The notes under the pieces: generated by a model | The model's input: only the letters and a program-made list of their open reading frames with translations | Told to the model about the DNA's origin: nothing | Databases searched by the model: none | NCBI RefSeq assembly: GCF_036365525.1 | Contig: NC_090399.1 | Span: forward strand, 52,236,430 to 52,300,429 | Origin: Heterodontus francisci | Lineage: Eukaryota | Direction of reading: 5' to 3' | Length of the DNA: 64,000 bases | Made by a program: the position numbers and the translations under genes | Shown: one piece after another, positions 2,761 through 64,000 of the stretch | Layout of the letters: each line of letters starts with the position of its first letter | Position numbering within the stretch: the stretch's first letter is position 1

Positions 2761-2775
2761 CTTCATGTCATGCTA

Positions 2776-3797: not shown

Positions 3798-3799
3798 AT

Positions 3800-22180: not shown

Positions 22181-22293
22181 AGTTTCTGTTTCAGTCTGAA
22201 ACTCAATCTGCCTGTATTCTGCTTCCTAGTAACTGGGAAGGAGGACTCTTTCTTTATCCCTTTCATTGGATATTTTTCAGTGTATTGACCAAT
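22181..22293 (+). promoter_or_regulatory. MHC-type proximal promoter: ISRE, X1-like box, Y/CCAAT boxes
   Basis: AGTTTCTGTTTC at 22181-22192 matches ISRE AGTTTCNNTTTC. CCTAGTAAC at 22225-22233 is RFX X1-like. ATTGG at 22265-22269 and CCAAT at 22289-22293. Order matches MHC promoters, 170-285 bp upstream of the ATG. Confidence 0.65.
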
Positions 22294-22464: not shown

Positions 22465-22516
22465 ATGTTACTGATTCTTTTCTCCATATCCCTGTGTTTT
22501 TCCTGGGTCTATCCCG
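22465..22516 (+). CDS. MHC class I-like exon 1, signal peptide MLLILFSISLCFSWVYP
   Basis: ATG at 22465, 17 hydrophobic codons, then G|GTAAGT consensus donor in phase 1. Matches the phase of the alpha1 acceptor (G+AC = Asp). Preceded by ISRE/X1/Y-like boxes. Linkage across 13.6 kb is inferred. Confidence 0.8.
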
Positions 22517-31487: not shown

Positions 31488-34400
31488 CATAGAAACATAG
31501 AAAATAGGAGCAGGAGTAGGTCATTTGGCCCTTCGAGCCTGCTCCACCATGCATTATGATCATGGCTGATCATCCAACTCAGTAACCTGTTCCTGCCTTC
31601 GCCCCATACCCTTTGATCCCTTTAGACCCAAGAGCTATATCTAACTCCTTCTTGAAAACATTCAATGTTTTGGCCTCAACTGCTTTCTGTGGTAGCAAAT
31701 TCCACAGGCTCACCACTCTCTGGGTGAAGAAATTTCTCCTCATCTCAGTCCTGAAAGGTTTACCCTGTATCCTTAGATTATGACCCCTGGTTCTGGACTC
31801 CCCCACCATAGGGAACATCCTTCCTGCATCTATCCTGTCAAGTCCTGTTAGAATTTTATAGGTTTCTATGAGTTCCCCCTCACTCTTCTGAACTTCAGCG
31901 AATATAATCATAACCGACTCAATCTCTCCTCATATGTCAGTCCCACCATCCCAGGAATCAGTCTGGAAAACCTTCGCTGCACTTCCTCTATAGCAAGAAC
32001 ATCCTTCCTCAGATAAGGAGACCAAAACTGCACACAATATTCCAGGTGTGGCCTCACCAAGGCCCTGTATAATTGCAGCAAGACATCCCTGCTCCTGTAC
32101 TCGAATCCTCTCGCTATGAAGGCCAACATACCATTTGCTTTTTCTACCGCCTGTTGCACCTGCATGCTTACCTTCAGCGACTGGTGTACGAGAACACCCA
32201 GGTCTCACTGCAGATTCCCCTCTCTCAGTTTATAGCCATTCAGATGATAATCTGCTTTCCTGTTTTTGCTACCAAAGTGGATAACCTCACATTTATCCAC
32301 ATTATACTGCATCTGCCATGCATTAGCCCACTCACTCAACTTGTCCAAATCACCCTGAAGCCTCTCTGCATCCTCCTCACAACTCACCCTCCCACCCAGT
32401 TTTGTGTCATCTGCAAATTTGGAGATATTAGGTCTGATTAGGGATAGTCAGCATGGCTTTGTGCGTGGGAAATCATGTCTCACAAATTTGATTGGGTTTT
32501 TTGAGGAGGTGACCAAGAGGATTGTCGAGGGCAGGGCGATGGACGTTGTCTACATGGACTTTAGCAAGGCCTTTGACAAGGTCCCGCATTGTATGCTGGT
32601 CCAGAAGGTTTGAACATATGAGATCCAGGGTGAGCTAGCAAATTGGATACAAAATTGGCTTGGTGATAGGAGGCAGAGGGTGGTAGTGGAGGGTTGTTTT
32701 TCAGATTGGAGGCCGGTGACCAGCGGTGTGCCGCAGGGATCGTTGCTGGGCCCTCTGTTGTTTGTCATATATATTAATGACTTGGATGTGAATGTAGGGG
32801 GCATGATTAGTAAGTTTGCAGATGACACCAAAATTTGTGGTATATTGGTTAGTGAAGAAGGTTGTCTGAGGTTACAACAGGATATAGATAAACTGGGAAA
32901 GTGGGCAATGGATTGGCAAATGGAATTTAACGCAGACAAGTGTAAAGTGATGCATTTTGGGAAGTTAAACCAGGGCAGGACATAAACAGTGAACGGCACC
33001 CTGGGGAGTGTTGTTGAGCAGAGAGACCTTGGAGTGCAAGTACATAGTTCCCTGAAAGTGGCAACACAGGTGGACAGGATGGTAAAGAAGGCGTATGGCA
33101 TGCTTGCCTACATCGGTCAAGGCATTGAGTACAAGAGTTGGGACGTCACGTTACAGTTGTACATAACGTTGGTTAGGCCGCACTTGGAGTACTGTGTGCA
33201 GTTCTGGTCACCGCATTACAGGAAAGATGTGATTAAGCTAGAGAGGGTGCAGAAAAGATTCACAAGGATGTTGCCTAGTATAGAGGGCTTGAGTTATTCA
33301 GAGAGATTGGAAAGGCTGGGTCTGTTTTCCCTGGAGCGAAGGAGGCTGAGAGGGGACATGATAGAGGTATATAAAATTATGAGAGGCATAGGTAGGGTAG
33401 ATAGCCAGAGTCTGTTTCCCATGGTAGGGGTGACTAAAACTAGAGGGCATAGATTTAAGGTGAGGGGGTGGAGGTTTAAAGGGGATCAAAGGGGTACATT
33501 TTTCACACAAAGAATAGTGGGTATCTGGACTGAGCTGCCTGAGGAGGTGGTGGAGGCAGGAACAGTAGCAACATTTAAGAGGCATCTGGACAGGTACTTG
33601 AATGAGCAAGGCATAGAGGGATATGGAATTAATGCAGGCAGGTGGGATTAGTATAGATAGGCATTATGGTCGGTATAGACGCGGTGGACCAAAGGGCCTG
33701 TTTCTATGCTGTACGACTCTATGACTCTATTACATTTAGTTCCCTCATCTAAGTCATTAATGTATATTGTGAATAGCTGGGGTCCTAATACTGATGCCTG
33801 TGGTACCCCACTAGTCAATGCCTGCCATTCGGAAAAAGACACATTTATTCCTACTCTTTCCTCACTATTGCGTTAATTTCCTCTTTAATCAGCAATGCAA
33901 CTCCACCGCCTTTTGCTTTTTATCTGTCCTTCCTAAATACTGAATACCCCTGGACGTTCATTTCCCATCCCTGGTCACCCTGCAGCCATGTCTCTGTAAT
34001 CCCGACTATATCATAACCGTTTACATCTATTTGCGTGATTAATTCATCCACTTAATTGCGAATGCTCCACACATTAAGGCACAAAGCCTTAAGGCTTGTC
34101 CTTTTAACATTACTTGTCCCCTTCCCACTATTTTCCACTGTGGCCCTGTTTGATTCTGGCCCTTGATTTCTCTGCCTATCACTTTTCTTATTCCCCTTAC
34201 TGTTTTTTGTTCTGGTCTTTGATCCCCCCTCCTCTGATTCCTTGCAAAGGTTCCCATCCCCCTGCCATTTTAGTTTAAACCCTCCCCAACCACTCTAGCA
34301 AATACTCCCCCTCGGACATCTGTCCCGATCCTGCCCAGGTGTAACCTGTCCAGTTTGTACTGGTCCCACCTCCCCCAGAACTGGTCCCAATATCCCAGGA

Positions 34401-36148: not shown

Positions 36149-36409
36149 ACAGTAATGTCTTTACTGTAATATATCTGGCAACCTCTGGCACGACTGAATT
36201 ACCTGAGTATGTTGGTGTGGGAATGATCAATGAGGTTCCAGTAGCTTATTACGACAGTGATACCCACCACATAGTCTCCCGGCAGCAGTGGATGACAGAC
36301 TCGTTTGATGCAGAGTACTGGGAATATCTCACAAATCGAGGGAATAAACATTGTGCAATTGCAAAGGAGAATCTGAATATGATAATGAAGGGGAGAAACC
36401 AGACATCGG
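36149..36409 (+). CDS. MHC class I-like exon 2, alpha1 domain
   Basis: ttttacag acceptor and G|GTAAG donor. Translates DSNVFTVIYLATSGTTELPEYVGVGMINEVPVAYYDSDTHHIVSRQQWMTDSFDAEYWEYLTNRGNKHCAIAKENLNMIMKGRNQTS, including the conserved N86 sequon NQT. Confidence 0.95.
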
Positions 36410-43260: not shown

Positions 43261-44290
43261 GGCATCCATCGCGGTGATGCCGGGCCGGCGCTGGGATGCA
43301 TCGCGGTGATGCCGGGCTGGCAGTGGCATCCATCGCTGCGACGCCGGGCCGACACTGGGATCCATCGCGGTGATGCGGGCCGGCGCTGGGATCCATCGCG
43401 GTGGTGCAGGGTCGGCGGTGGGATCCATCGCGATGATGCCAGGCCGGCGGAGGCATCCATCGCGGTGGTGCAGGGCCGATGGAGGCATCCATCGCGGTGA
43501 TGCCGGGCCGACACTGGGATCCATCGCGGTGATGCGGGCCGGCGCTGGGATCCATCGCGGTGGTGCAGGGTCGGCGGTGGGATCCATCGCGGTGATGCCA
43601 GGCCGGCGGAGGCATCCATCGCGGTGGTGCAAGGCCGGCGGTGGGATCCATCGCGGTGATGGCGGGCCGGCGCTGGGATCCATCGCGGTGATGCCAGGTC
43701 GGCGGAGGCATCCATCGCTGTGACGCCGGGCCGACACTGGGATCCATCGCGGTGATGCGGGCCAGCGCTGGGATCCATCGCGGTGGTGCAGGGTCGGCGG
43801 TGGGATCCATCGCGGTGATGCCAGGCTGGCGGAGGCATCCATCGCAGTGGTGCAGGGCCGGCGGTGGGATCCATCGCGGTGATGCCGGGCTGGCAGGGGC
43901 ATCCATCGCTGTGACGCTGGGCCGACGCTGGGAACCATCGCGGTGATGCGGGCCGGCGCTGGGATCCATTGCGGTGGTGCAGGGCCGGTGGTGGGATCCA
44001 TCACGATGTTTCCAGGCCGGCGGTGGGATCCATCGCGGTGATGCCGGGCCGGCGGTGGCATACATCGCGGTGATGCCAGGCCGGCGGTGGCATCCATCGT
44101 GGTGATGCTGGGCCGGCGGTTGCATCCATCGCGGTGATGCCAGGCCGGCGGTGGGATCCATCGCGAAGGTTGCGGGCCGGCGGTGGGATCCATCGCGGTG
44201 ATGCCGGGCCGGCGGTGGCATCCATCGTGGTGATGCCAGGCCGGCGGTGGCATCCATCGTGGTGATGCTGGGCCGGCGGTGGCATCCATC
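43261..44290. repeat. 32-bp satellite, GC-rich variant domain
   Basis: Unit GGATCCATCGCGGTGATGCCGGGCCGGCGGTG. Confidence 0.93.
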
Positions 44291-47200
44291 GCTGTGAGGC
44301 CGAGCCCGCGGTGAGATCTATTACTGTGATACCGAGCCCGCGGTGGGATCTATTGCTGTGATACAGAGCCCGCGGTGGGATCTATTAGTGTGCTACCGAG
44401 CCCGCGGTGGGATCTATTGCTGTGATACACAGCCCGCAGTGGGATCTATTAGTGTGATACCGAGCCTGCGGTGGGATCTATTAGTGTGACACCGAGCCCG
44501 CGGTGGGATCTATTGCTGTGATACAGAGCCCGCGGTGAGATCTATTGCTGTGATACCAGGCCCGCGGTGGGATCTATTGCTGTGATACAAAGCCCGCTGT
44601 GGGATCTATTGCTGTGATACAGAGCCCGAGGTGGGATCTATTACAGTGATAGTGAGCCCGCGGTAGGATCTATTAGTGTGATAATGAGCCCGCGGTGGGA
44701 TCTATTAATGTGATACCGTGCCCGCGGTGAGATCTATTGCTGTGATACCGGGCCCGCGGTGGGATCTATTACAGTGATACTGGGCCCGCGGTGGGATCTA
44801 TTACTGTGATACTGAGCCCGCGGTTGGATCTATTAGTGTGATACTGAGCCCGCGGTGGGATCCATTACTGTGATACTGAGCCCGCGGTGGGATCTATTAC
44901 TGTGATACCGAGCCCGCGGTGGGATCTATTACGGTGATACCGGGCCCGCGGTGGGATCTATTACGGTGATACCGGGCCCGCGGTGGGATCTATTACTGTG
45001 ATACTGAGCCCGCGGTTGCATCTATTAGTGTGATACTGAGCCCGCGGTGGGATCTATTACTGTGATACCGACCCCGCGGTGGGTCTATTACTGTGATACT
45101 GAGCCCGCGGTTGGATCTATTACTGTGATACAGAGCCCGCGGTGGTATCTATTGCTGTGATACAGAGCCCGTGGTGTTATCTTTTGCTGTGATACCGAGC
45201 CCGCACTGGTATCTATTAGTGTGATACTGAGCCCGTGGTGGTATCTATTGCTGTGATACAGAGCCCGTGGTGTTATCTTTTGCTGTGATACCGAGCCCGC
45301 ACTGGTATCTATTGCTGTGATACCGAGCCCGCACTGGTATCTATTGCCTGTGATACCGAGCCCGCACTGGTATCTATTGCTGTGATACCGAGCCCGCACT
45401 GGTATCTATTACTGTGATACTGAGCCCGCAGTGGGATCTTTTGCTGTGATACCGAGCCCGTGGTGGTATCTGTTGCTGTGATGCTGAGCCCGCGGTGGGA
45501 TCTATTACTGTGATACTGAGCCCGCGGTGGGAACTATTACTGTGATACTGAGCCCGCACTGGTATCTGTTGCTGTGATACTGAGCCCGCGGTGGGATTTA
45601 TTACTGTGATACTGAGCCCGCACTGGTATCTATTGCTGTGATACTGAGCCCGCACTGGTATCTGTTGCTGTGATACTGAGCCCGCGGTGGGATCTATTGC
45701 TGTGATACTGAGCCAGCGGTGGGATCTATTACTGTGAGACTGAGCCCGCGGTGGGATCTATTGCTGTGATACTGAGCCCGCAGTGGGATTTATTACTGTG
45801 ATACTGAGCCCGCACTGGTATCTATTACTGTGATACTGAGCCCGCAGTGGGATTTATTACTGTGAAACTGAGCCCGCACTGGTATCTGTTGCTGTGATAC
45901 TGAGCCCGCAGTGGGATCTATTGCTGTGATACTGAGCCAGCGGTGGGATCTATTACTGTGAGACTGAGCCCGCGGTGGGATCTATTGCTGTGATACTGAG
46001 CCCGCAGTGGGATTTATTACTGTGATACTGAGCCCGCACTGGTATCTATTACTGTGATACTGAGCCCGCGGTGGGATCTATTGCTGTGATACTGAGCCCG
46101 CGGTGGAATCCAATATTGTGATACTGAGCCCGCACTGGTATCTATTAGTGTGATACTGAGCCTGCAATGGGATCTATTGCTGTGATACCGAGCCCGCACT
46201 GGTATCTATTGCTGTGATACTGAGCCCGCACTGGTATCTATTGCTGTGATACTGAGCCCGCACTGGTATCTATTGCTGTGATACTGAGCCCGCGGTGGGA
46301 TCTATTGCTGTGATACTGAGCCCGCGGTGGAATCCAATATTGTGATACTGAGCCCGCACTGGTATCTATTAGTGTGATACTGAGCCTGCAATGGGATCTA
46401 TTGCTGTGATACCGAGCCCGCACTGGTATCTATTGCTGTGATACTGAGCCCGCGGTGGAATCTATTGCTGTGATACAGAGCCCTGGTGGTATCTATTGCT
46501 GTGAAACAGAGCCCGTGGTGTTATCTTTTGCTGTGATACCGAGCCCGCACTGGTATCTATTGCCTGTGATACCGAGCCCGCACTGGTATCTATTGCTGTG
46601 ATACCGAGCCCGCACTGGTATCTATTACTGTGATACTGAGCCCGCAGTGGGATCTTTTGCTGTGATACCGAGCCCGCGGTGGGATCTATTACTGTGATAC
46701 TGAGCCCGCAGTGGGATCTATTGCTTTGATACTGAGCCCGCGGTGGTATCTATTGCTGTGATACTGAGCCCGCACTGGTATCTATTACTGTGATACTGAG
46801 CCCGCAGTGGGATCTATTGCTGTGATACTGAGCCTGCAGTGGGATCTATTGCTGTGATACTGAGCCCGCAGTGGGATCTATTGCTGTGATACTGAGCCCG
46901 CACTGGTATCTATTACTGTGATACTGAGCCCGCAATGGTATCTATTGCTGTGATACCGAGCCCGCAGTGGGATCTATTGCTGTGATACTGAGCCCGCACT
47001 GTTATCTATTACTGTGATACTGAGCCCGCACTGGTATCTATTACTGTGATACTGAGCCCGCAGTGGGATCTATTACTGTGATACTGAGCCCGCAATGGGA
47101 TATATTGCTGTGATACCGAGCCCGCAGTGGGATCTATTGCTGTGATACTGAGCCCGCAATGGGATCTATTGCTGTGATACTGAGCCCGCGGTGGGATCTA

Positions 47201-50200
47201 TTGCTGTGATACTGAGCCCGCACTGTTATCTATTACTGTGATACTGAGCCCGCACTGTTATCTATTACTGTGATACTGAGCCCGCAGTGGGATCTATTAC
47301 TGTGATACTGAGCCCGCAATGGGATCTATTGCTGTGATACCGAGCCTGCAGTGGGATCTATTTCTGTGATACTGAGCCCGCAATGGGATCTATTACTGTG
47401 ATACTGAGCCCGCACTGGTATCTATTGCTGTGATACTGAGCCCGCGGTGGGATCTATTACTGTGATACTGAGCCCGCGGTGGGATCTATTGCCGTGATAC
47501 CGAGCCCGCGGTGGGATCTATTGCTGTGATACCGAGCCTGCAGTGGGATCTATTACTGTGATACTGAGCCCGCAATGGGATATATTGCTGTGATACCGAG
47601 CCCGCAGTGGGATCTATTGCTGTGATACTGAGCCCGCAATGGGATCTATTGCTGTGATACCGAGCCTGCAGTGGGATCTATTTCTGTGATACTGAGCCCG
47701 CAATGGGATCTATTACTGTGATACTGAGCCCGCACTGGTATCTATTGCTGTGATACTGAGCCCGCGGTGGGATCTATTACTGTGATACTGAGCCCGCGGT
47801 GGGATCTATTGCCGTGATACCGAGCCCGCGGTGGGATCTATTGCTGTGATACTGAGCCTGTGGTGGGATCTATTGCTGTGATACCGAGCCCGCGGTGGGA
47901 TCTATTGCTGTGATACTGAGCCCACACTGGTATCTATTACTGTGATACTGAGCCCGCACTGGTATCTATTACTGTGATACTGAGCCCGCAGTGGGATCTA
48001 TTGCTGTGATACTGAGCCCGTGGTGGGATCTATTGCTGTGATACTGAGCCCGCACTGGTATCTAATACTGTGATACTGAGCCCGCGGTGGGATCTATTGC
48101 TGTGATACTGAGCCCGCGGTGGGATCTATTGATGTGATACCGTGCCCGCGGTGGTATCTATTGCTGTGATACTGAGCCCGCGGTGGGATCTATTGATGTG
48201 ATACTGAGCCCGTGTTGGATCTATTGCTGTGATACTGATCCCGTGGTGGTATCTATTGCTGTGATACCGAGCCCGTGGTGGAATCTATACTGTGATACTG
48301 AGCCCGCGGTGGGATCTATTGCTGTGATACCGAGCCCGTGGTGGAATCTATTACTGTGATACCGAGCCCGCGGTGGAATCTATTACTGTGATACTGAGCC
48401 CGTGGTGGAATCTATTACTGTGATACCGAGCCCGCGGTGGGATCTATTGCTGTGATACCGAGCCCGCGGTGGGATCTATTACTGTGATACGGAGCCCGTG
48501 GTGGAATCTATTACTGTGATACCGAGCCCGCGGTGGGATCTATTACTGTGATACTGAGCCCGCGGTGGAATCTATTACTGTGATACTGAGCCCGTGGTGG
48601 AATCTATTACTGTGATACCGAGCCCGCGGTGGGATCTATTGCTGTGATACTGAGCCCGCGGTGGGATGTATTGCTGTGATGCTGAGCCCGCGGTGGGATC
48701 TATTACTGTGATACCGAGCCTGCGGTGGGATCTATTGCTGTGATACTGAGCCCGCGGTGGGATTTATTACTGTGATACTGAGCCCGCACTGGTATCTATT
48801 GCTGTGATACTGAGCCCGCACTGGTATCTGTTGCTGTGATACTGAGCCCGCGGTGGGATCTATTGCTGTGATACTGAGCCCGCAGTGGGATCTATTGCTC
48901 TGATACCGAGCCCGTGGTGGAATCTATTACTGTGATACTGAGCCCGCGGTGGGATCTATTGCTGTGATACTGAGCCCGCACTGGTATCTATTGCTGTGAT
49001 ACTGAGCCCGCGGTGGGATCTATTACTGTGATACTGAGCCCGCACTGGTATCTAATACTGTGATACTGAGCCCGCGGTGGGATCTATTGCTGTGATACTG
49101 AGCCCGCGGTGGGATCTATTGATGTGATACCGTGCCCGCGGTGGTATCTATTGCTGTGATACTGAGCCCGCGGTGGGATCTATTGATGTGATACTGAGCC
49201 CGTGTTGGATCTATTGCTGTGATACTGATCCCGTGGTGGTATCTATTGCTGTGATACCGAGCCCGTGGTGGAATCTATACTGTGATACTGAGCCCGCGGT
49301 GGGATCTATTGCTGTGATACCGAGCCCGTGGTGGAATCTATTACTGTGATACCGAGCCCGCGGTGGAATCTATTACTGTGATACTGAGCCCGTGGTGGAA
49401 TCTATTACTGTGATACCGAGCCCGCGGTGGGATCTATTGCTGTGATACCGAGCCCGCGGTGGGATCTATTACTGTGATACGGAGCCCGTGGTGGAATCTA
49501 TTACTGTGATACCGAGCCCGCGGTGGGATTTATTACTGTGATACTGAGCCCGCACTGGTATCTATTTCTGTGATACTGAGCCCGCACTGGTATCTATTAC
49601 TGTGATACTGAGCCCGCACTGGTATCTATTGCTGTGATACCGAGCCCGCAGTGGGATCTATTGCTGTGATACTGAGCCCGCGGTGGAATCCAATATTGTG
49701 ATACCGAGCCCGCAGTGGGATCTATTACTGTGATACTGAGCCTGCAATGGGATCTATTGCTGTGATACCGAGCCCGCACTGGTATCTATTGCTGTGATAC
49801 TGAGCCCGCGGTGGAATCTATTGCTGTGATACAGAGCCCGTGGTGGTATCTATTGCTGTGATACAGAGCCCGTGGTGTTATCCTTTGCTGTGATACCGAG
49901 CCCGCACTGGTATCTATTGCCTGTGATACCGAGCCCGCACTGGTATCTATTGCTGTGATACCGAGCCCGCACTGGTATCTATTACTGTGATACTGAGCCC
50001 GCAGTGGGATCTATTGCTTTGATACTGAGCCCGCGGTGGTATCTATTGCTGTGATACTGAGCCCGCACTGGTATCTATTACTGTGATACTGAGCCCGCAA
50101 TGGGATCTATTGCTGTGATACCGAGCCCGCAGTGGGATCTATTGCTGTGATACTGAGCCCGCACTGTTATCTATTACTGTGATACTGAGCCCGCACTGGT

Positions 50201-53200
50201 ATCTATTACTGTGATACTGAGCCCGCAGTGGGATCTATTACTGTGATACTGAGCCCGCAATGGGATCTATTGCTGTGATACCGAGCCCGTGGTGGGATCT
50301 ATTACTGTGATACTCTGCCCGCGGTGGGATCTATTGCTGTGATACCGAGCCCGTGGTGGGATCTATTACTGTGATACCGAGCCCGTGGTGGGATCTATTG
50401 CTGTGATACTGGGCCCGCGGTGGGATCTATTACTGTGATACTGAGCCCGCGGTGGAATCCAATATTGTGATACTGAGCCCGCACTGGTATCTATTAGTGT
50501 GATACTGAGCCTGCAATGGGATCTATTGCTGTGATACCGAGCCCGCACTGGTATCTATTGCTGTGATACTGAGCCCGCGGTGGAATCTATTGCTGTGATA
50601 CAGAGCCCTGGTGGTATCTATTGCTGTGAAACAGAGCCCGTGGTGTTATCTTTTGCTGTGATACCGAGCCCGCACTGGTATCTATTGCCTGTGATACCGA
50701 GCCCGCACTGGTATCTATTGCTGTGATACCGAGCCCGCACTGGTATCTATTACTGTGATACTGAGCCCGCAGTGGGATCTTTTGCTGTGATACCGAGCCC
50801 GCGGTGGGATCTATTACTGTGATACTGAGCCCGCAGTGGGATCTATTGCTTTGATACTGAGCCCGCGGTGGTATCTATTGCTGTGATACTGAGCCCGCAC
50901 TGGTATCTATTACTGTGATACTGAGCCCGCAGTGGGATCTATTGCTGTGATACTGAGCCTGCAGTGGGATCTATTGCTGTGATACTGAGCCCGCAGTGGG
51001 ATCTATTGCTGTGATACTGAGCCCGCACTGGTATCTATTACTGTGATACTGAGCCCGCAATGGTATCTATTGCTGTGATACCGAGCCCGCAGTGGGATCT
51101 ATTGCTGTGATACTGAGCCCGCACTGTTATCTATTACTGTGATACTGAGCCCGCACTGGTATCTATTACTGTGATACTGAGCCCGCAGTGGGATCTATTA
51201 CTGTGATACTGAGCCCGCAATGGGATATATTGCTGTGATACCGAGCCCGCAGTGGGATCTATTGCTGTGATACTGAGCCCGCAATGGGATCTATTGCTGT
51301 GATACTGAGCCCGCGGTGGGATCTATTGCTGTGATACTGAGCCCGCACTGTTATCTATTACTGTGATACTGAGCCCGCACTGTTATCTATTACTGTGATA
51401 CTGAGCCCGCAGTGGGATCTATTACTGTGATACTGAGCCCGCAATGGGATCTATTGCTGTGATACCGAGCCTGCAGTGGGATCTATTTCTGTGATACTGA
51501 GCCCGCAATGGGATCTATTACTGTGATACTGAGCCCGCACTGGTATCTATTGCTGTGATACTGAGCCCGCGGTGGGATCTATTACTGTGATACTGAGCCC
51601 GCGGTGGGATCTATTGCCGTGATACCGAGCCCGCGGTGGGATCTATTGCTGTGATACCGAGCCTGCAGTGGGATCTATTACTGTGATACTGAGCCCGCAA
51701 TGGGATATATTGCTGTGATACCGAGCCCGCAGTGGGATCTATTGCTGTGATACTGAGCCCGCAATGGGATCTATTGCTGTGATACCGAGCCTGCAGTGGG
51801 ATCTATTTCTGTGATACTGAGCCCGCAATGGGATCTATTACTGTGATACTGAGCCCGCACTGGTATCTATTGCTGTGATACTGAGCCCGCGGTGGGATCT
51901 ATTACTGTGATACTGAGCCCGCGGTGGGATCTATTGCCGTGATACCGAGCCCGCGGTGGGATCTATTGCTGTGATACTGAGCCTGTGGTGGGATCTATTG
52001 CTGTGATACCGAGCCCGCGGTGGGATCTATTGCTGTGATACTGAGCCCACACTGGTATCTATTACTGTGATACTGAGCCCGCACTGGTATCTATTACTGT
52101 GATACTGAGCCCGCAGTGGGATCTATTGCTGTGATACTGAGCCCGTGGTGGGATCTATTGCTGTGATACTGAGCCCGCACTGGTATCTAATACTGTGATA
52201 CTGAGCCCGCGGTGGGATCTATTGCTGTGATACTGAGCCCGCGGTGGGATCTATTGATGTGATACCGTGCCCGCGGTGGTATCTATTGCTGTGATACTGA
52301 GCCCGCGGTGGGATCTATTGATGTGATACTGAGCCCGTGTTGGATCTATTGCTGTGATACTGATCCCGTGGTGGTATCTATTGCTGTGATACCGAGCCCG
52401 TGGTGGAATCTATACTGTGATACTGAGCCCGCGGTGGGATCTATTGCTTTGATACCGAGCCCGTGGTGGAATCTATTACTGTGATACCGAGCCCGCGGTG
52501 GAATCTATTACTGTGATACTGAGCCCGTGGTGGAATCTATTACTGTGATACCGAGCCCGCGGTGGGATCTATTGCTGTGATACCGAGCCCGCGGTGGGAT
52601 CTATTACTGTGATACGGAGCCCGTGGTGGAATCTATTACTGTGATACCGAGCCCGCGGTGGGATCTATTACTGTGATACTGAGCCCGCGGTGGAATCTAT
52701 TACTGTGATACTGAGCCCGTGGTGGAATCTATTACTGTGATACCGAGCCCGCGGTGGGATCTATTGCTGTGATACTGAGCCCGCGGTGGGATGTATTGCT
52801 GTGATGCTGAGCCCGCGGTGGGATCTATTACTGTGATACCGAGCCTGCGGTGGGATCTATTGCTGTGATACTGAGCCCGCGGTGGGATTTATTACTGTGA
52901 TACTGAGCCCGCACTGGTATCTATTGCTGTGATACTGAGCCCGCACTGGTATCTGTTGCTGTGATACTGAGCCCGCGGTGGGATCTATTGCTGTGATACT
53001 GAGCCCGCAGTGGGATCTATTGCTCTGATACCGAGCCCGTGGTGGAATCTATTACTGTGATACTGAGCCCGCGGTGGGATCTATTGCTGTGATACTGAGC
53101 CCGCACTGGTATCTATTGCTGTGATACTGAGCCCGCGGTGGGATCTATTACTGTGATACTGAGCCCGCACTGGTATCTAATACTGTGATACTGAGCCCGC

Positions 53201-55578
53201 GGTGGGATCTATTGCTGTGATACTGAGCCCGCGGTGGGATCTATTGATGTGATACCGTGCCCGCGGTGGTATCTATTGCTGTGATACTGAGCCCGCGGTG
53301 GGATCTATTGATGTGATACTGAGCCCGTGTTGGATCTATTGCTGTGATACTGATCCCGTGGTGGTATCTATTGCTGTGATACCGAGCCCGTGGTGGAATC
53401 TATACTGTGATACTGAGCCCGCGGTGGGATCTATTGCTGTGATACCGAGCCCGTGGTGGAATCTATTACTGTGATACCGAGCCCGCGGTGGAATCTATTA
53501 CTGTGATACTGAGCCCGTGGTGGAATCTATTACTGTGATACCGAGCCCGCGGTGGGATCTATTGCTGTGATACCGAGCCCGCGGTGGGATCTATTACTGT
53601 GATACGGAGCCCGTGGTGGAATCTATTACTGTGATACCGAGCCCGCGGTGGGATTTATTACTGTGATACTGAGCCCGCACTGGTATCTATTTCTGTGATC
53701 CTGAGCCCGCACTGGTATCTATTACTGTGATACTGAGCCCGCACTGGTATCTATTGCTGTGATACCGAGCCCGCAGTGGGATCTATTGCTGTGATACTGA
53801 GCCCGCGGTGGAATCCAATATTGTGATACCGAGCCCGCAGTGGGATCTATTACTGTGATACTGAGCCTGCAATGGGATCTATTGCTGTGATACCGAGCCC
53901 GCACTGGTATCTATTGCTGTGATACTGAGCCCGCGGTGGAATCTATTGCTGTGATACAGAGCCCGTGGTGGTATCTATTGCTGTGATACAGAGCCCGTGG
54001 TGTTATCCTTTGCTGTGATACCGAGCCCGCACTGGTATCTATTGCCTGTGATACCGAGCCCGCACTGGTATCTATTGCTGTGATACCGAGCCCGCACTGG
54101 TATCTATTACTGTGATACTGAGCCCGCAGTGGGATCTATTGCTTTGATACTGAGCCCGCGGTGGTATCTATTGCTGTGATACTGAGCCCGCACTGGTATC
54201 TATTACTGTGATACTGAGCCCGCAATGGGATCTATTGCTGTGATACCGAGCCCGCAGTGGGATCTATTGCTGTGATACTGAGCCCGCACTGTTATCTATT
54301 ACTGTGATACTGAGCCCGCACTGGTATCTATTACTGTGATACTGAGCCCGCAGTGGGATCTATTACTGTGATACTGAGCCCGCAATGGGATCTATTGCTG
54401 TGATACCGAGCCCGTGGTGGGATCTATTACTGTGATACTCTGCCCGCGGTGGGATCTATTGCTGTGATACCGAGCCCGTGGTGGGATCTATTACTGTGAT
54501 ACCGAGCCCGTGGTGGGATCTATTGCTGTGATACTGGGCCCGCGGTGGGATCTATTACTGTGATACTGAGCCCGCGGTGGGATCTATTGCTGTGATACTG
54601 AGCCCGCGGTGGGATCTATTGCTGTGATACTGAGCCCGCACTGGTATCTATTGCTGTGATACCGAGCCCGTGGTGGGATCTGTTACTGTGATACCGAGCC
54701 CGTGGTGGAATCTATTGCTGTGATACTGAGCCCGCGGTGGGATCTATTGCTGTGATCCTGAGCCCGCGGTGGGATCTATTACTGTGATACTGAGCCCGCA
54801 CTGGTATCTATTGCTGTGATACTGAGCCCGCAGTGGGATCTATTGCTGTGATACTGAGCCCGCGGTGGGATCTATTACTGTGATACTGAGCCCGCACTGG
54901 TATCTATTGCTGTGATACTGAGCCCGCGGTGGGACTTATTACTGTGATACTGAGCCCGCAGTGGGATCTATTGCTGTGATACTGAGCCCGCGGTGGGATC
55001 TATTGCTGTGATACTGAGCCCGCACTGGTATCTATTGCTGTGATACCGAGCCCGTGGTGGAATCTATTACTGTGATACTGAGCCCGCGGTGGGATCTATT
55101 GCTGTGATACCGAGCCCGCGGTGGTATCTATTGCTGTGATACTGAGCCCGCGGTGGGATCTATTACTGTGATACTGAGCCCGCACTGGTATCTGTTGCTG
55201 TGATACTGAGCCCGCTGTGGGATTTATTACTGTGATACTGAGCCCGCGGTGGGATCTATTCCTGAGATACTGAGCCCGCACTGGTATCTATTGCTGTGAT
55301 ACTGAGCCCGTGGTGGGATCTATTGCTGTGATACTGAGCCCGCGGTGGGATCTATTGCTGTGATACTGAGCCCGCAGTGGGATCTATTGCTGTGATACTG
55401 AGCCCGCACTGGTATCTATTGCTGTGATATCGAGCCCGTGGTGGAATCTATTACTGTGATACTGAGCCCGCGGTGGGATCTATTGCTGTGATACTGAGCC
55501 TGCGGTGGGATCTATTGCTGTGATACCGAGCCCGCGGTGGTATCTATTGCTGTGATACTGAGCCCACACTGGGATCTA
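44291..55578. repeat. 32-bp satellite main array (about 11.3 kb) with 990-bp and 4125-bp higher-order duplications
   Basis: Unit GGATCTATTGCTGTGATACTGAGCCCGCGGTG; variant monomers recur at offsets of 990 and 4125 bp. Confidence 0.97.
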
Positions 55579-55641
55579 CTCACGTAATAAAGGGACTTTT
55601 TCCATTAACAATCAATTTTTGAATTTCTGTTGACTTGACAG

Positions 55642-55917
55642 GAATTCACACTTTCCAATGGATAAGAACTGTTGAGATCACTGACAACGGCTCCATTAAG
55701 AGATCGATGCGTTTTGGATATGATGGAAAGGATTATATTAGTTTAGAACCTGACAGAATGAAATGGGTTGCAACCAATCAGAATGCAGTGAAGACCAAGG
55801 AGAAATGGGATTCTGATGAATCCTGGAACAATTATTGGAAATGGAATTTGGAAGTAGAACTTGTTGAACGTTTAAAACTACGTTTACACTTTGGAAAGGA
55901 ATATCTCCAAAGGAAAG
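55642..55917 (+). CDS. MHC class I-like exon 3, alpha2 domain (no cysteines)
   Basis: ttgacag acceptor, G|GTATT donor, 276 nt. Translates GIHTFQWIRTVEITDNGSIKRSMRFGYDGKDYISLEPDRMKWVATNQNAVKTKEKWDSDESWNNYWKWNLEVELVERLKLRLHFGKEYLQRK. Confidence 0.95.
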
Positions 55918-56034
55918 GTATTTATTTCAGTTTTTACCCCATGTTCTGATCTAACATCACTAATCTATGAATCCATTATCCTGTTCCATTCAGTGTTTGT
56001 GTATTGTTTGTGTTTTTATCCTTTCCCATTACAG

Positions 56035-56313
56035 TTCAGCCTGAAGTGTTCATCTCCAGAAGTGACCCCAATAGTCAGTACAAGCCTCTCACTCTCTCCT
56101 GCCTGGTTACTGGATTTTATCCTGTAGTCATTGAGGTGAACTGGCTAAGGAATGGAGAGGTAATGTCTGAGAGTCAATCCTCGGGGGTGCGACCGAACCA
56201 CGATGGGACCCATCAGATCCAGAAAGAGATTGAAATAAATGCTGGGGAAGAGGATCAATACTCCTGTCGAATTGATCACAGCAGCCTGGCAGAGGCCAAG
56301 CTCTCTCAGTGGG
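56035..56313 (+). CDS. MHC class I-like exon 4, alpha3 (Ig C1-set) domain
   Basis: Polypyrimidine tract plus ttacag acceptor, G|GTAAG donor. Translates VQPEVFISRSDPNSQYKPLTLSCLVTGFYPVVIEVNWLRNGEVMSESQSSGVRPNHDGTHQIQKEIEINAGEEDQYSCRIDHSSLAEAKLSQW, with both Ig cysteines and the core Trp. Confidence 0.97.
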
Positions 56314-57371
56314 GTAAGGAACTGCCCTGGATGTGTGTGAGAGGAGAGACAGAGAATGAGAGAGAGAGTGGGTGTGAGCGAGAGGGGAGAATGAATGAGA
56401 TATAGATTGTAATGGACAGGAGAAACTGAGACTGTGGCAAGGAAACAGATTCAAAAAAATGAATAGAAGAGTGGAACTGGGTAAATTAAAATAAAAGACA
56501 TCACCAAGCAAATAATATTTTTGGATTTATCCCATGTTTGGCTGCAGGAGTTTTGAACTGACTTACATTGCTATGTTGCCGTTAAAGTAAATTTAGCAGA
56601 CAAGTGGTTAAATCCACCCAGCGAACAAGCTTTCTAGGAAAACTTGTTCGATCAGCAACTGGGATTTTATAAAGTGGCTGTCTGAATTGTGTTTTTCACA
56701 AACCACATCAGTTGGAGACATGGGGATTTCTTGGTACTGTGCTGACAAACACACATCCAATATTACGATGGCCTCAACCCCCAGAGCAAAGCACGAGGTG
56801 GCTGCTCGGAGCCCAGAAATTAGAACGTGGGGCAAGTTTTGCTTGGTTTCTCCAGTAGCTGGTGAGTGTTCTACTTTTGTCTTCAAGCTAGGAGACTGTA
56901 ACTTGCTATCACTTTACTAAATCAGTAACTAGTTAACTAATCAAATAAATAATAAGTTTCAACAGATATGGCAAGGCAGGTGGTGTGCCATGACTGCAAC
57001 ATGTGGGAGTTTGTGCAAAGTATTGCAGCCTTGGACAACCATATCTGCGCTAAGTGCCTGCAGTTTGAGCAAATCAGGCTCAGAGTTGAACTAAAGTCCA
57101 AGTTGCAGACATTGCAGAGTATCAGGGAGAGGTGGGGGTGGTGGTGCGGGGGGCAGTGTGGTGGTGTGGGGAGTTACCTGGACATTTTATTCAGGAGGCA
57201 GTCACATCCCTTAGGTTAAGTAGAACTTTAAAGTTGGTCAATGGTCAGGGACCGGAGGATGTGATTGAGTGTCAGGCAGGTATGGGGATCCAGGATGTAG
57301 TGATGAGGGAGCCTCGGCCCTTGACTTTGACCAATGGGTACGAGGTATTTGCTACCTGTGTAGATGAGAAC

Positions 57372-58155: not shown

Positions 58156-60264
58156 TAGTATAGTTAGGGGGATAGGTTCAGTTCTCTGCAGCTGTGACTG
58201 GGAGTTCCAAAGGTTGTGATGCCTGCCTAGTGCCAGTGTTAGAGGCATTTCCTCATAGCTGGAGATGGACTTGGAGTCGGAGGGGGAGGATCCAACTTTC
58301 GTGGCCCACATAGAAAGAACTAGGAGTGATGTTCTGCTGAGAAACTTTGAGGAGTTAGGATCCAAATTAAAATGCAGAATCTCAAAGATTATAATCTCTG
58401 CATTATTACCTTAACTACATGCCAATTGGCATAGAGTCAAGCAGATTCCAGAATTAAGCATGTGGCTCCGAGAGTGGTGTGGCAAGAAGGGGTTTGCTTC
58501 ATGGGGCACTGGCACCAGTAGTTGGGAAAGAGGGAGCTGTTGCATTGGGATGGAATGTGCTTCAACCAGGCTGGGACCAGTGTCCTGACGAATTGTATAA
58601 CTAGGGCTGTGGATAGGGTTTTAAACTAACAAAGGGTTGGAAGGGTTCAGGTGAAGGAAGATTTAGAAATCTGAAGAGAAAAGTCGAGCCAAAAGAGCAG
58701 TGTAGTGATTTGGGTAAAGACAAACAGAGTAGGACAGGAAGTGACAGAGTTTAACGGCAATAGTGCATCAGTGAATAAGGTCCATGCAAAGAATAGTCGT
58801 AAAAAAATATAATTAACATCTCTTTATCTGAATGGGTGAAGCATTCGTAATAATGTAGATGAACTCATGGCATGAATAGAGATAAAGGGTTTTGTTCTAA
58901 TCACCATTACAGTGACATGGTTACAAGGTGACCAAGATTGGGAAATACGTTTTCCAAGGTACACAAGATTTCGAAAAGACAGACAGAATGGAAAAGGAGG
59001 AGGAGTAGCCCTATAGTAAAGGATGACATAAGGACAGTATTGAGATAGGATCTTGGCTCAGAGGATCAGGAAGTAGAATCAGTATAGGTGGAGATTAGGA
59101 ATAACAAGGGTCATAAAACGCTCGTGGGAGTAGTTTATAGGCCCCCTAATAGTAGTTATATAATTGGACAGAGTATTAAGCAAGAAATAATTGGACACTG
59201 TAATAAAGCCAATCTAATAATTGTGGAGCATTTTAATCTTCATATGGACTGGACAAATACAAATTAGCAAAGGTGATCTGGAAGATGAGTTTGTAGAATG
59301 CTGTCCCAACAGTTTCCTGGAAAAATACATCGTGGAACCAAACTTGGAGTAAACCTATTTTATATCTTGTATTGTGCAATCAGGTGGCTTTAACTAGTAA
59401 TCTCATAGTAAAAGATTGGCTTGGATAAAGTAATTATAATTGAATTGGATGTGCTCTACAAGGAACACAGAAAGTTAGCATACAGGTACAGCAAGCAATT
59501 AGGAAGGCAAATGGAATGTTGGCCTTTATTGTAAAGGATTAGAGTACATGAATAAGGAAGTCTTGCTACAATAGTACAGGGATTTGGTGAGACCACCCCT
59601 GGAATACTGTGCGCAAGGATGAAATACTTACATTGGAGGCAGCACAGCGAAGGTTCACTATGTTGGTTTCTCAGGTGAGAGGGTTGTCCGATGATGAGAA
59701 GCTGAGTAAATTGGGCCTATACTTTCTGGAGTTTAGAAGTATGTGAGGTGGTCTCATTGAAACATACAAGATTATGAAGGGGCTTGATATGGTAGATACT
59801 GAGGCATCGTTTCCCATGGCCGGGGAATCTAAAACATGGCAGCACAGTCCCAGGGCAAGGGGAGGATCATTTAAGGACTAAGATGAGGAGACATTTCTTC
59901 ACTCTGTTTACCACAGAGGGCAGTGGATTCTCCATCACTGAGACAGATTTTTGGTCTCTCAGGGAATCAAGGGATCTGGGGAGTGGGCAGGAAAGTGGAA
60001 TTGAAGCCCAAGATCAGCCATGATCAGCACCTTTCCTACTTACTCGGGTTGTTTGCCCAATCAGCCTCGTGTCCCTCTGTCCCAGCTCAGAACTGCCTGA
60101 TCTGATCCTCATTTCACCGTCAGCATAACCCCAGTGTGCTCCTCCTCAATCCCTCTTCTAGAGGCAGATTTTCTTCATTCTCTGAAAGGCAATATGGCAA
60201 ATTAGATCACAAACCCATGATAAAACATATCTGATTGTCAATTGAAATTGTTGTAATGGAATCC

Positions 60265-62045
60265 AAAGGGGGTTTGATAGAGGGGTTCTCTAATGGGTAA
60301 TAATCCAGGGGGGTTTGACAGAGGGGTTCTGTAATGAGATATAATCCAGGGCGGTTTGACAGAGGGGTTCTGTAATGGGTAATAATCCAGGGAGGTTTGA
60401 TAGAGGGGTTCTCTAATGGGTAATAATCCAGGGGGGTTTCATAGAGGGGTTCTCTAATGGGTAATAATCCAGGGGGGTTTCATAGAGGGGTTCTCTAATG
60501 GGTAATAATCCAGGGGGGTTTCATAGAGGGGTTCTCTAATGGGTAATAATCCAGGGGGGTTTGATAGAGGGGTTCTCTAATGGGTAATAATCCAGGGGGG
60601 TTTCATAGAGGGGTTCTCTAATGGGTAATAATTCAGGGAGGTTTGATAGAAGGGTTCTCTAATGGGTAATAATTCAGGGAGGTTTGATAGAAGGGTTCTC
60701 TAATGGGTAATAATTCAGGGGGTTTGAAAGAGGGGTTCTCTAATGGGTAATATTCCAGGGGGGTTTGATAGAGGGGTTCTCTAATGGTTAATAATCCGGG
60801 GGTTTGATAGAGGGGTTCTCTAATGGGTAATAATTCAGGGAGGTTTAATAGAAGGGTTCTCTAATGGGTAATAATTCAGGGAGTCTAAAAGAGGGGTTCT
60901 CTAATGGGTAATAATCCAGGGCGTTTGATAGAGGGGTTCTCTAATGGGTAATAATCAAGGGGGGTTTGATAGAGGGGTTCTCTAATGGGCAATATTCCAG
61001 GGGGGTTTGATAGAGGGGTTCTCTAATGGTTAATAATCAAGGGGGTTTGATAGAGGGGTTCTCTAATGGGTAATATTCCAGGGGGGGGGGGGGTTGACAG
61101 AGGGGTTCTCTAATGGGTAATAATCTAGGGGGTTTGATAGAGGGGTTCTCTAATGGGTAATAATCCAGGGGGGTTTGATAGAGGGGTTCTCTAATGGATA
61201 ATATTCCAGGGGGGTTTGACAGAGGGGTTCTCTAATGGGTAATATTCCGGGGGGTTTGATAGAGGGGTTCTCTAATGGGTAATAATCCAGGGGGGTTTGA
61301 TAGAGGGGTTCTCTAATGGATAATATTCCAGGGGGGTTTGACAGAGGGGTTCTCTAATGGGTAATAATCTAGGGGGTTTGATAGAGGGGTTCTCTAATGG
61401 GTAATAATCCAGGGGGGTTTGATAGAGGGGTTCTCTAATGGATAATATTCCAGGGGGGTTTGACAGAGGGGTTCTCTAATGGGTAATATTCCAGGGGGTT
61501 TGATAGAGGGGTTCTCTAATGGGTAATAATCCAGGGGGGTTTGATAGAGGGGTTCTCTAATGGATAATATTCCAGGGGGGTTTGACAGAGGGGTTCTCTA
61601 ATGGGTAATATTCCGGGGGGTTTGATAGAGGGGTTCTCTAATGGGTAATAATCCAGGGGGGTTTGATAGAGGGGTTCTCTAATGGATAATATTCCAGGGG
61701 GGTTTGACAGAGGGGTTCTCTAATGGGTAATATTCCGGGGGGTTTGATAGAGGGGTTCTCTAATGGGTAATAATCCAGGGGGGTTTGATAGAGGGGTTCT
61801 CTAATGGATAATATTCCAAGGGGGATTGACAGAGGGGTTCTCTAATGGGTAATGTTCCGGGGTGGGGGGTTGATAGAGGGGTTCTCTAATGGGTAATAAT
61901 CCAGGGGGGTTTGATAGAGGGGTTCTCTAATGGGTAATATTCCAGGGGGGTTTGACAGAGGGGTTCTCTAATGGGTAATAATCCAGGGGGTTTGATAGAG
62001 GGGTTTTCTAATGCTTAATAATCCAGGGGGGTTTGATAGAGGTTG
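60265..62045. repeat. 41-bp G-run satellite
   Basis: Unit GATAGAGGGGTTCTCTAATGGGTAATAATCCAGGGGGGTTT; about 122-bp trimeric higher-order unit from about 61190. Confidence 0.95.
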
Positions 62046-63592: not shown

Positions 63593-63843
63593 AGTGCGGC
63601 ACTCCCTCAGTACTGACCCTCCGACAGTGCGGCACTCCCTCAGTACTGACCCTCCGACAGTGCGGCACTCCCTCAGTACTGACGCTCCGACAGTGCGGCA
63701 CTCCCATGTACTGACCCTCCGACAGTGCGGCACTCCCTCAGTACTGGCCCTCCGACAGTACGGCACTCCCATGTACTGACCCTCCAACAGTGCGGCACTC
63801 CCTCAGTACTGGCCCTCCGACAGTGCGGCACTCCCTCAATACT
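63593..63843. repeat. 33-bp minisatellite derived from the SINE body
   Basis: Unit CAGTGCGGCACTCCCTCAGTACTGACCCTCCGA, about 7.5 copies. Confidence 0.9.
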
Positions 63844-64000
63844 GCAATGGAGTGTCAGCCTAGCTTTTGTGCTCAGAAGTCTAATTGTGCTCAGTTTTCC
63901 CTGTCCACAACGTCTCTCTTGACCCCTCCACTACCTGTGTGTTGCTAGTCCGAGATCCAGGGTGGAATTTTTACTTGCTGCTCGGGTGTGAATCTTGTCC

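What the first reader, a model, noticed from the sequence alone, without database searches (positions are those of the whole stretch)
55642..55917. Intact-looking MHC class I-like gene whose alpha2 domain has lost BOTH cysteines of the canonical C101-C164 disulfide
Seen: the exon has no Cys. QWIRTVE stands where class I has QxMYGCD (C101 to V), and NLEVELVERL stands where class I has YLEGTCVEWL (C164 to L). Flanking motifs, exon length, splice sites and frame are intact. Known: this disulfide pins the alpha2 helix to the sheet and is conserved in classical class I, CD1, MR1, FcRn and HFE. Inference: paired replacement by two aliphatic residues looks like a selected hydrophobic contact rather than decay, pointing to a structurally divergent non-classical shark lineage or sublineage. 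It may still fall in a described family such as UCA or UEA; I cannot assign it by eye.
Basis: partly seen in the sequence, partly recalled or inferred. Interest (0 to 1): 0.88.

Follow-up and report, generated by a model that had tools for sequence, protein, structure and literature searches.

The report
Shark class I gene lacking groove disulfide
This exon belongs to an intact, transcribed non-classical MHC class I gene of the horn shark; its missing alpha2 disulfide is real, but it is the shared, ancient trait of a roughly 100-gene shark-only family (almost certainly the published UEA lineage), not a peculiarity of this gene.

Summary
Window 55642-55917 (+) is a 276-nt, AG/GT-bounded alpha2 exon with no cysteine. 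Val (55671-55673) and Leu (55860-55862) occupy the columns that hold Cys101 and Cys164 in 138 of 147 other class I alpha2 domains.

The gene is Heterodontus francisci XP_067865876.1. Its leader, alpha1, alpha2 and alpha3 exons lie at 22.5, 36.1, 55.6 and 56.0 kb; the TM and tail exons lie beyond the window. Spliced RNA contigs cover only the exons and join alpha1-alpha2, alpha2-alpha3 and alpha3-TM. It is therefore not a pseudogene.

The trait is not unique to this gene. About 95 relatives in 13 shark species form one clade. None has Cys at 101 (Val in 65 of 69), while position 164 varies (L, F, Y, C, S, G, D). So the change was not a paired replacement. Leu164 is nearly fixed in this gene's sublineage (one member keeps Cys).

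The family is shark-only, multicopy, far from classical UAA, and has three clades. That fits the described UEA lineage, but I could not read that paper or obtain named references.

Still of interest: this gene has 1:1 orthologues with 80-90% alpha1 identity across galeomorph sharks, a lone Cys in the alpha1 helix, and a long conserved cytoplasmic tail.

The scan also noted another disulfide-less class I gene 2.09 Mb upstream (s1-872061).

The parts
22465..22516 (+). Exon 1: start codon and leader peptide (17 codons + 1 nt), GT donor at 22517
   Evidence: tblastn of P0001/P0153; boundary and phase fixed; splice dinucleotides
36149..36409 (+). Exon 2: alpha1 domain (261 nt). Carries the N-glycosylation site NQT and a lone Cys (TGT at 36352-36354) in the alpha1 helix.
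   Evidence: Pfam MHC_I positions 16-90, E 8.6e-8; 100% match to P0001; the last 30 nt appear as the loose end of RNA contigs that abut the alpha2 exon
44176..55578 (.). 11.4-kb array of a 32-bp minisatellite (356 copies). It fills most of the 19.2-kb alpha1-alpha2 intron and ends 63 bp before the alpha2 acceptor.
   Evidence: Tandem Repeats Finder, score 15943
55642..55917 (+). Exon 3: alpha2 domain (276 nt), with no cysteine. This is the stretch in the finding.
   Evidence: exact match to residues 106-196 of XP_067865876.1
55671..55673 (+). GTT = Val in the Cys101 column (floor strand)
55860..55862 (+). CTT = Leu in the Cys164 column (alpha2 helix)
56035..56313 (+). Exon 4: alpha3 Ig C1-set domain (279 nt); both Ig cysteines are present
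   Evidence: Pfam C1-set E 3.5e-17; GT..AG joint 55917|56035 in RNA contigs

Best explanation
The exon is the alpha2 exon of an intact, transcribed, non-classical MHC class I heavy-chain gene of the horn shark (RefSeq isoforms XP_067865876.1 and P0153). It belongs to a shark-specific multigene family, most likely the published UEA lineage. In that family the alpha2 disulfide, which is ancestral to both class I alpha2 and class II beta1, was lost once at the family's origin (Gly100-Cys101 became Thr/Ser-Val). The helix partner at 164 was thereby freed and diversified. It became fixed as Leu in almost all members of this gene's sublineage. Shown here: gene structure, splicing, family-wide distribution of the trait, deep orthology, and a confidently predicted canonical class I fold. 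Inferred: Val101 on the floor strand and Leu164 on the helix pack as a hydrophobic contact that replaces the covalent staple. Also inferred: the molecule is a membrane-bound class Ib protein whose groove has lost most residues that clamp a peptide's N-terminus (Tyr7 to Val, Tyr159 to Asn, Tyr171 to Arg, Trp167 to Arg; Tyr59 kept). It keeps Thr143, Lys146 and Trp147, so it probably binds something other than a conventional 8-10-mer peptide. Its long, conserved acidic cytoplasmic tail suggests specialised trafficking.
For: Exon anatomy and Cys-free translation. Class I identity. Exact database protein and species. Ninety-five relatives in 13 shark species; the family is one clade (SH-aLRT 99, stem 0.86) separate from classical-type shark, chimaera and bony-fish class I. 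Position 101 is never Cys and position 164 is variable. The window gene sits in a starred 13-row clade whose topology follows shark phylogeny, with Leu164 in all 13. Alpha1 is 80-90% identical to orthologues but 45-52% to same-genome paralogues. RNA contigs cover the exons only, with 0 mismatches in run X1, a GT..AG joint alpha2-alpha3, a loose end identical to the alpha1 exon end, and a loose end encoding the TM-exon start of P0153. The AF2 model has pLDDT above 90 over residues 21-290 and TM 0.88-0.92 to chicken BF2 and shark UAA 6lup. Peptide-anchor comparison against classical shark sequences. Literature: UEA is multicopy, MHC-linked and more ancient than UBA (PMC10751288, PMC12562908). 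The helix-to-sheet disulfide is inferred ancestral for MHC (PMC8236899), and teleost lineages keep it as a hallmark (PMC4364491).
Against: The name UEA rests on elimination. The UEA paper (PMC8454915) is not held, and no named UEA reference sequence was found. No coordinates of the model were available, so the Val101-Leu164 contact was not measured. A crude pN/pS of about 0.54 from 14 differences is not significant. Beta2m association, surface expression and ligand are all untested. The contigs are labelled 'RNA?' by guess; their RNA nature is inferred from exon-only coverage and splice joints.
Confidence: 0.8

Rival explanations
1. A young pseudogene or decaying class I copy whose cysteines were lost by drift.
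For: The gene has giant satellite-filled introns. Many paralogues exist, and some family models are fragmentary.
Against: All four exons in the window are open with canonical splice sites. Spliced transcripts exist with 0 mismatches. Intact orthologues at 78-87% identity occur in at least 9 species spanning four galeomorph orders plus Heptranchias. The alpha3 cysteine pair is kept in essentially every member. The fold is predicted with high confidence.
Confidence: 0.03
2. The family is a shark class I lineage that has not been described, distinct from UEA, UCA, UDA, UFA and UGA. In that case the family-wide loss of the disulfide would be unreported.
For: No database name or accessible text links these proteins to UEA. 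Whether the UEA paper mentions the alpha2 cysteines could not be checked.
Against: The family matches the published UEA description. It is multicopy, shark-only and far from UAA (about 35% identity), with three major clades. The same chromosome reportedly carries class II. The other described shark lineages are single- or low-copy (UDA, UFA, UGA), UAA-derived (UBA) or restricted to dogfish (UCA, from my memory of the paper's abstract). A bamboo-shark protein from the 2018 genome (GCC21421.1), the species used in that paper, sits in the 90% cluster of this gene's orthologue.
Confidence: 0.12
3. The disulfide loss is adaptive rather than a compensated neutral loss. On this view, removing the staple gives a more flexible or wider groove for bulky or hydrophobic ligands. 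It might also free folding from the redox steps of the peptide-loading complex.
For: The loss is ancient and was never reverted at position 101 in about 95 genes. Gly100, which together with the disulfide shapes the local strand geometry in classical class I (PMC8236899), is also replaced. Half of the eight peptide-terminus anchors are replaced.
Against: Position 164 tolerates Ser, Gly and Asp as well as large hydrophobics, which looks like relaxed rather than directional constraint. The AF2 model superposes on classical structures at 2.1-2.7 A. No functional data exist.
Confidence: 0.3

Closest known systems
Shark non-classical class I lineage UEA (Almeida et al., J Immunol 2021; summarised in PMC10751288 and PMC12562908)
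   Same: Shark-only, highly multicopy and old. Far from classical UAA. Loss of most invariant peptide-terminus residues. Three sublineages, matching the three major clades. MHC chromosome.
   Different: No difference was demonstrated. Assignment is by elimination, because no named reference sequence or paper text could be obtained. Whether the paper reports the missing alpha2 disulfide is unknown to me.
Classical shark class I UAA (Triakis scyllium P0249/P0250; nurse shark structure 6LUP)
   Same: Same exon plan. Collinear alpha1 and alpha2 without indels. Same predicted fold (TM 0.90). N86 glycosylation site. Tyr59, Thr143, Lys146 and Trp147 are kept.
   Different: 31-41% identity per domain. 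UAA keeps Gly100-Cys101 and Cys164 and all terminus anchors (Tyr7, Arg84, Tyr159, Tyr171, Trp167). UAA has a short cytoplasmic tail.
Expanded class Ib families of other ectotherms (Xenopus XNC / mhc1-uba; teleost L lineage)
   Same: Large, species-specifically expanded non-classical families with non-peptide-type, often hydrophobic grooves. Some members are deeply conserved.
   Different: These are independent origins. Grimholt et al. state that the teleost S and P lineages keep the alpha2 cysteine pair as a hallmark (PMC4364491). The cysteine status of the L lineage and of XNC was not checked.
MR1 / CD1 (conserved monomorphic class Ib)
   Same: One-to-one orthologues with unusually high alpha1 conservation across very old splits. 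For CD1, a cytoplasmic tail that suggests specialised trafficking.
   Different: No specific sequence relationship: MR1 structures score lower than classical ones (TM 0.80). MR1 chains align with both Cys.

Membership tests
MHC class I heavy chain (Pfam MHC_I + C1-set) | alpha1/alpha2 peptide-binding superdomain recognised by the family profile above the curated cut-off | tested here: met
   alpha2 scores 58.6 bits and alpha1 32.4 bits against a cut-off of 28.3. 502 PDB class I chains match at E<=1.
MHC class I heavy chain (Pfam MHC_I + C1-set) | Membrane-proximal Ig C1-set alpha3 domain with its cysteine pair; exon-per-domain structure with phase-1 introns | tested here: met
   C1-set E 3.5e-17. 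Cys at alpha3 positions 22 and 77, and all junctions AG/GT in phase 1.
MHC class I heavy chain (Pfam MHC_I + C1-set) | Conserved alpha2 intradomain disulfide Cys101-Cys164 | tested here: not met
   Val and Leu occupy these columns. This is a hallmark rather than a formal criterion; the predicted fold is nonetheless canonical.
Classical (class Ia) MHC class I | Invariant residues binding the peptide termini (Tyr7, Tyr59, Tyr/Arg84, Thr143, Lys146, Trp147, Tyr159, Tyr171) | tested here: not met
   Only Tyr59, Thr143, Lys146 and Trp147 are kept. The others are Val7, Gly84, Asn159 and Arg171, by collinear alignment to classical-type shark class I sequences (Triakis P0249, Mustelus P0252).
Classical (class Ia) MHC class I | High allelic polymorphism and ubiquitous expression | not tested
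   Contig data cannot show alleles or expression levels.
Shark UEA lineage | Clusters with named UEA reference sequences in alpha1-alpha3 trees | not testable with these tools
   No named UEA sequence could be retrieved, and the paper is not held.
Shark UEA lineage | Large multigene family | tested here: met
   At least 5 distinct Heterodontus proteins lie on the same 74.47-Mb record. There are 10-18 clusters per species in Chiloscyllium, Hemiscyllium, Cetorhinus and Carcharodon.
Shark UEA lineage | Present in sharks (Selachii) but not in rays or chimaeras | tested here: met
   All hits above 50% identity come from 13 shark species, including the squalomorphs Heptranchias and Pristiophorus. 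Callorhinchus appears only at 31% and has both Cys; no ray appears. Caveat: the search is limited to annotated proteins in the collection.
Shark UEA lineage | Distinct from, and older than, the UAA/UBA group; three sublineages | tested here: met
   The family clade has SH-aLRT 99 on a stem of 0.86. Three major clades hold 13, 19 and 31 rows. Correspondence to the published sublineages is assumed, not shown.
Shark UEA lineage | MHC linkage (class Ib cluster next to the class II region, flanked by brd2/b2m and col11a2/rxrb) | not testable with these tools
   Only unverified scan notes exist, placing class II and other class I exons on the same chromosome. The flanking genes could not be examined.

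The most novel reading that the evidence does not exclude
Within the big disulfide-less family, this gene's orthogroup may be a shark counterpart of MR1/CD1-type monomorphic presenting molecules. It consists of single 1:1 orthologues with 80-90% alpha1 identity from Heterodontus to catsharks, a fixed Val101/Leu164 pair, a lone alpha1-helix Cys and a roughly 110-residue conserved acidic cytoplasmic tail. A TM-skipping soluble isoform is predicted in three species. On this reading it has one ancient conserved ligand and a dedicated trafficking route, and this has not been singled out in the literature.
Probability: 0.2. Interest if true: 0.6.

Novelty: new member of a known kind. Interest (0 to 1): 0.3.

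Why it matters
The helix-to-sheet disulfide is one of the most conserved features of MHC molecules. It is shared by class I alpha2 and class II beta1 and is inferred for their common ancestor. A whole family of about 100 expressed genes has lived without it since before the crown-shark radiation. That shows the MHC fold does not need the staple, and it offers a natural experiment on groove stability, chaperone and redox dependence, and ligand type. For this particular gene the added value is modest. It documents the horn-shark member and shows that Cys101 went first, with position 164 drifting afterwards. It also points to one unusually conserved orthogroup worth functional study.

Tried and rejected
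As a substitute I classed 14 listed differences between the window's alpha2 exon and a diverged transcript contig (4 synonymous, 10 non-synonymous; pN/pS about 0.54). That is too few differences, and the partner is of uncertain orthology, so no conclusion follows.

2. Reading the UEA and UDA papers: neither is held. A supplement search of PMC10751288 for UEA or accession numbers came back blank. Cluster names carry only automatic 'F10 alpha chain-like' labels.

3. TM and tail exons: tblastn of P0153 found none in the window, so they lie beyond 64000.

4. Extra alpha2-like exons or pseudo-exons in the 19-kb intron: none were found.

5. Pseudogene reading: rejected (see rivals).

6. 'Paired, co-selected replacement': rejected, because position 101 is invariant while 164 varies.

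8. I first took PDB 7cpo for a shark structure; it is Anolis.

Exons were searched by reference, and the identical database proteins P0001 and P0153 were used instead. Leader and alpha1 were concatenated only inside a local script, to fix the splice phase.

Full report
OBSERVATION. Window 55642-55917 (+) is bounded by AG (55640-41) and GT (55918-19). Read from 55644, it gives 91 codons without a stop and without a single cysteine. Pfam MHC_I matches it over profile positions 93-179, the alpha2 half, at E 7.7e-16. phmmer finds 502 solved class I chains. In the printed alignments the Val of 'QWIRTVE' lies on the Cys of 'YGCE' and the Leu of 'LEVELVE' lies on the Cys of 'LEETC'. The best-scoring chain, 7cpo, is Anolis class I; the shark structure is 6lup. 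The two codons are GTT at 55671-55673 and CTT at 55860-55862. To judge rarity I searched the exon against 1.84 billion representative proteins. Of 147 near-complete alpha2 domains in the best 150 hits, 138 have both cysteines, 6 lack one, and 3 lack both. Those three are this gene and two shark relatives.

THE GENE. The exon is 100% identical to residues 106-196 of XP_067865876.1, 'class I histocompatibility antigen, F10 alpha chain-like isoform X2' of Heterodontus francisci (P0001, 399 aa). Mapping P0001 and isoform X1 (P0153, 439 aa) back on the window gives four exons:
- leader, 22465-22516
- alpha1, 36149-36409
- alpha2, 55642-55917
- alpha3, 56035-56313
All have AG/GT borders in phase 1. 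The connecting-peptide/TM exon and the exons for a roughly 110-residue cytoplasmic tail are not in the window. Alpha3 is a C1-set domain (E 3.5e-17) with both Ig cysteines. The 19.2-kb alpha1-alpha2 intron is mostly an 11.4-kb array of a 32-bp minisatellite (44176-55578) that ends 63 bp before the alpha2 acceptor. I sent no joined model of my own to any search. Exons were searched by reference, and the identical database proteins were used where a full-length query was needed. The only joining was leader plus alpha1 inside a local script, to fix the splice phase.

EXPRESSION. Thirteen public runs hold the exon's words. Contigs of four of them were laid on 55570-57000. In run X1 they cover 55641-55917 and 56033-56313 with 0 mismatches and give zero depth in the flanking and intervening intron bins. 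A joint skips 117 nt with GT..AG ends, which is the alpha2-alpha3 splice. The loose end before 55641 in runs X3 and X10 is identical to window 36377-36406, the end of the alpha1 exon, so the 19-kb intron is removed. The loose end after 56313 in X1 encodes the start of the TM exon of P0153. The runs are only guessed to be RNA, but exon-only coverage with three correct junctions shows it. Contigs cannot give expression levels.

THE TRAIT BELONGS TO A FAMILY. A search with residues 20-291 of P0001 returned 112 proteins at E<=1e-10. About 95 of them, at 51-87% identity, come from 13 shark species: Heterodontus, two Scyliorhinus, Mustelus, Carcharodon, Cetorhinus, Stegostoma, two Chiloscyllium, Hemiscyllium, Rhincodon, Heptranchias and Pristiophorus. 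Classical Triakis class I follows at 36% and Callorhinchus at 31%. No ray appears. In the alpha2 alignment no family member has Cys at 101. In 69 complete ectodomains position 101 is V 65, I 2, A 1, L 1, with five changes on the tree including the basal one. Position 164 is L 23, F 20, Y 6, C 5, S 5, G 4, D 2 and singletons, with 20 changes. The alpha3 pair is kept in 69 and 68 of 69. A maximum-likelihood tree separates the family from classical-type shark, chimaera and bony-fish sequences (SH-aLRT 99, stem 0.86) and shows three major clades of 13, 19 and 31 rows. So Cys101 was lost once in the family's ancestor, together with the preceding Gly100, which is Thr, Ser, Asn, Ile or Lys here. The orphaned position 164 then diversified. 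This contradicts the 'paired replacement' reading. It is compatible with a hydrophobic 101-164 contact in those sublineages that carry Leu, Phe or Tyr.

THIS GENE'S ORTHOGROUP. The window gene lies in a starred 13-row clade (SH-aLRT 98) within the 19-row clade (95). All 13 rows of the inner clade carry Leu164; in the 19-row clade one member keeps Cys164. Within the inner clade the branching follows shark relationships: Heterodontus, then Mustelus, Carcharodon and Scyliorhinus, then Stegostoma and Chiloscyllium. Branches there are short (0.03-0.10). Per-domain identities are telling. Alpha1 is 80-90% identical to the orthologues of the two Scyliorhinus, Mustelus, Carcharodon, Stegostoma and Chiloscyllium, but only 45-52% to the Heterodontus paralogues P0164 and P0165. 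Alpha3 is 94-98% identical to those paralogues and 82-89% to orthologues, which indicates concerted evolution of alpha3 within a genome. Alpha2 is intermediate. The orthogroup also shares a lone Cys in the alpha1 helix (TGT at 36352-54; HLA position about 71). In the galeomorph members it shares a long acidic cytoplasmic tail with conserved blocks. TM-exon-skipping isoforms are predicted in Heterodontus, S. torazame and Rhincodon. Intact orthologues across four galeomorph orders, plus a Heptranchias member, argue strongly against neutral decay. A crude pN/pS of 0.54 from 14 differences is uninformative.

STRUCTURE AND GROOVE. AlphaFold2 with an 83-row family alignment predicts residues 21-290 at pLDDT above 90, including the whole alpha2 domain; the tail is disordered. 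Foldseek places the model on chicken BF2 (TM 0.90-0.92, rmsd 2.1-2.7 A) and shark UAA 6lup (TM 0.90). MR1 scores lower, at about 0.80. The gene is collinear with classical-type shark class I sequences. By that alignment it keeps Tyr59, Thr143, Lys146 and Trp147 but has Val7, Gly84 (Asn in orthologues), Asn159, Arg167 and Arg171. This agrees with the scan note on a one-sided groove (s1-872084). I infer a class Ib molecule that does not clamp peptide N-termini. Its ligand is unknown.

WHAT IT IS CALLED. Described shark lineages are UAA (classical), UBA (multicopy, UAA-derived), UCA (dogfish only, from my memory of the abstract), UDA, UFA and UGA (single or low copy) and UEA (multicopy, more ancient, in the class Ib cluster next to class II) (PMC10751288 and PMC12562908). 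From my memory of the Almeida et al. 2021 abstract, UEA is shark-only, lacks the invariant terminus-binding residues and has three sublineages. The family found here fits UEA on every point I could test. A 2018 bamboo-shark protein (GCC21421.1) sits in the 90% cluster of this gene's orthologue. I could not obtain the paper or any named reference, so I give the assignment about 0.85. I cannot say whether the missing disulfide is stated in print, though it would be obvious in any alignment figure. Background: Wu et al. infer the helix-to-sheet disulfide for the ancestral MHC domain (PMC8236899). Grimholt et al. call the alpha2 and alpha3 cysteines hallmarks kept in the teleost S and P lineages (PMC4364491).

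VERDICT. I rate it as a new member of a known kind, interest about 0.3. The residual interest lies in the family-wide dispensability of the staple, the order of events (101 first, 164 later), and the very conserved orthogroup with its unusual tail. The scan independently noted another disulfide-less class I gene 2.09 Mb upstream on the same chromosome (s1-872061) and a class II alpha1 exon 1.6 Mb downstream (s1-872062). I did not verify either.

Noticed in passing
window 44176-55578: An 11.4-kb array (356 copies, 89% matches) of a 32-bp minisatellite fills the alpha1-alpha2 intron and stops 63 bp before the alpha2 acceptor. The 19-kb intron is nevertheless spliced correctly.
   Followed up: partly
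window 2384-14644 and 20266-21741: About 9.4 kb of a 35-bp satellite lies upstream of the gene in three arrays (2384-2744, 2775-3786, 6619-14644); the middle array is in inverted orientation. A 1.5-kb G-rich 39-bp repeat ends about 720 bp before the start codon. Both give long spurious ORFs in several frames.
   Followed up: no
window 22181-22293: An exact ISRE-type core (GAAACAGAAACT on the minus strand, 22181-22192) lies about 280 bp upstream of the ATG. It is followed by ATTGG (22265-22269) and CCAAT (22289-22293). This layout recalls class I promoters. These are consensus matches only; no TATA box was found.
   Followed up: partly
window 36352-36354: A lone Cys in the alpha1 helix (about HLA position 71) is conserved in the orthologues from Scyliorhinus, Mustelus, Carcharodon, Chiloscyllium and Heptranchias but absent from paralogues. 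It could be a site for dimerisation or for ligand or partner bonding.
   Followed up: partly
window 56035-56313 versus P0164, P0165: The alpha3 domain is 94-98% identical among Heterodontus paralogues, while alpha1 is only 45-52% identical. This indicates within-genome homogenisation (gene conversion) of alpha3, and to a lesser degree of alpha2.
   Followed up: partly
beyond window end (P0153 residues 290-439; P0001, P0155, P0167): The orthogroup has a roughly 110-residue acidic cytoplasmic tail with conserved blocks, including a C-terminal ...ETTQSLLRH shared with Scyliorhinus. TM-exon-skipping (potentially secreted) isoforms are predicted in three species.
   Followed up: partly
window 60260-62042 and 63593-63844: Further minisatellites (41/122-bp and 33-bp units) lie in the intron downstream of alpha3. 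Reverse-transcriptase-like ORFs (for example 32359-33648 on +, 24802-25730 on -) lie in intron 1.
   Followed up: no
P0005 (Cetorhinus), P0011: Some predicted family isoforms join alpha2 directly to the connecting-peptide/TM region and so lack alpha3 altogether. Whether this is real exon skipping or an artefact of the gene models is unknown.
   Followed up: no
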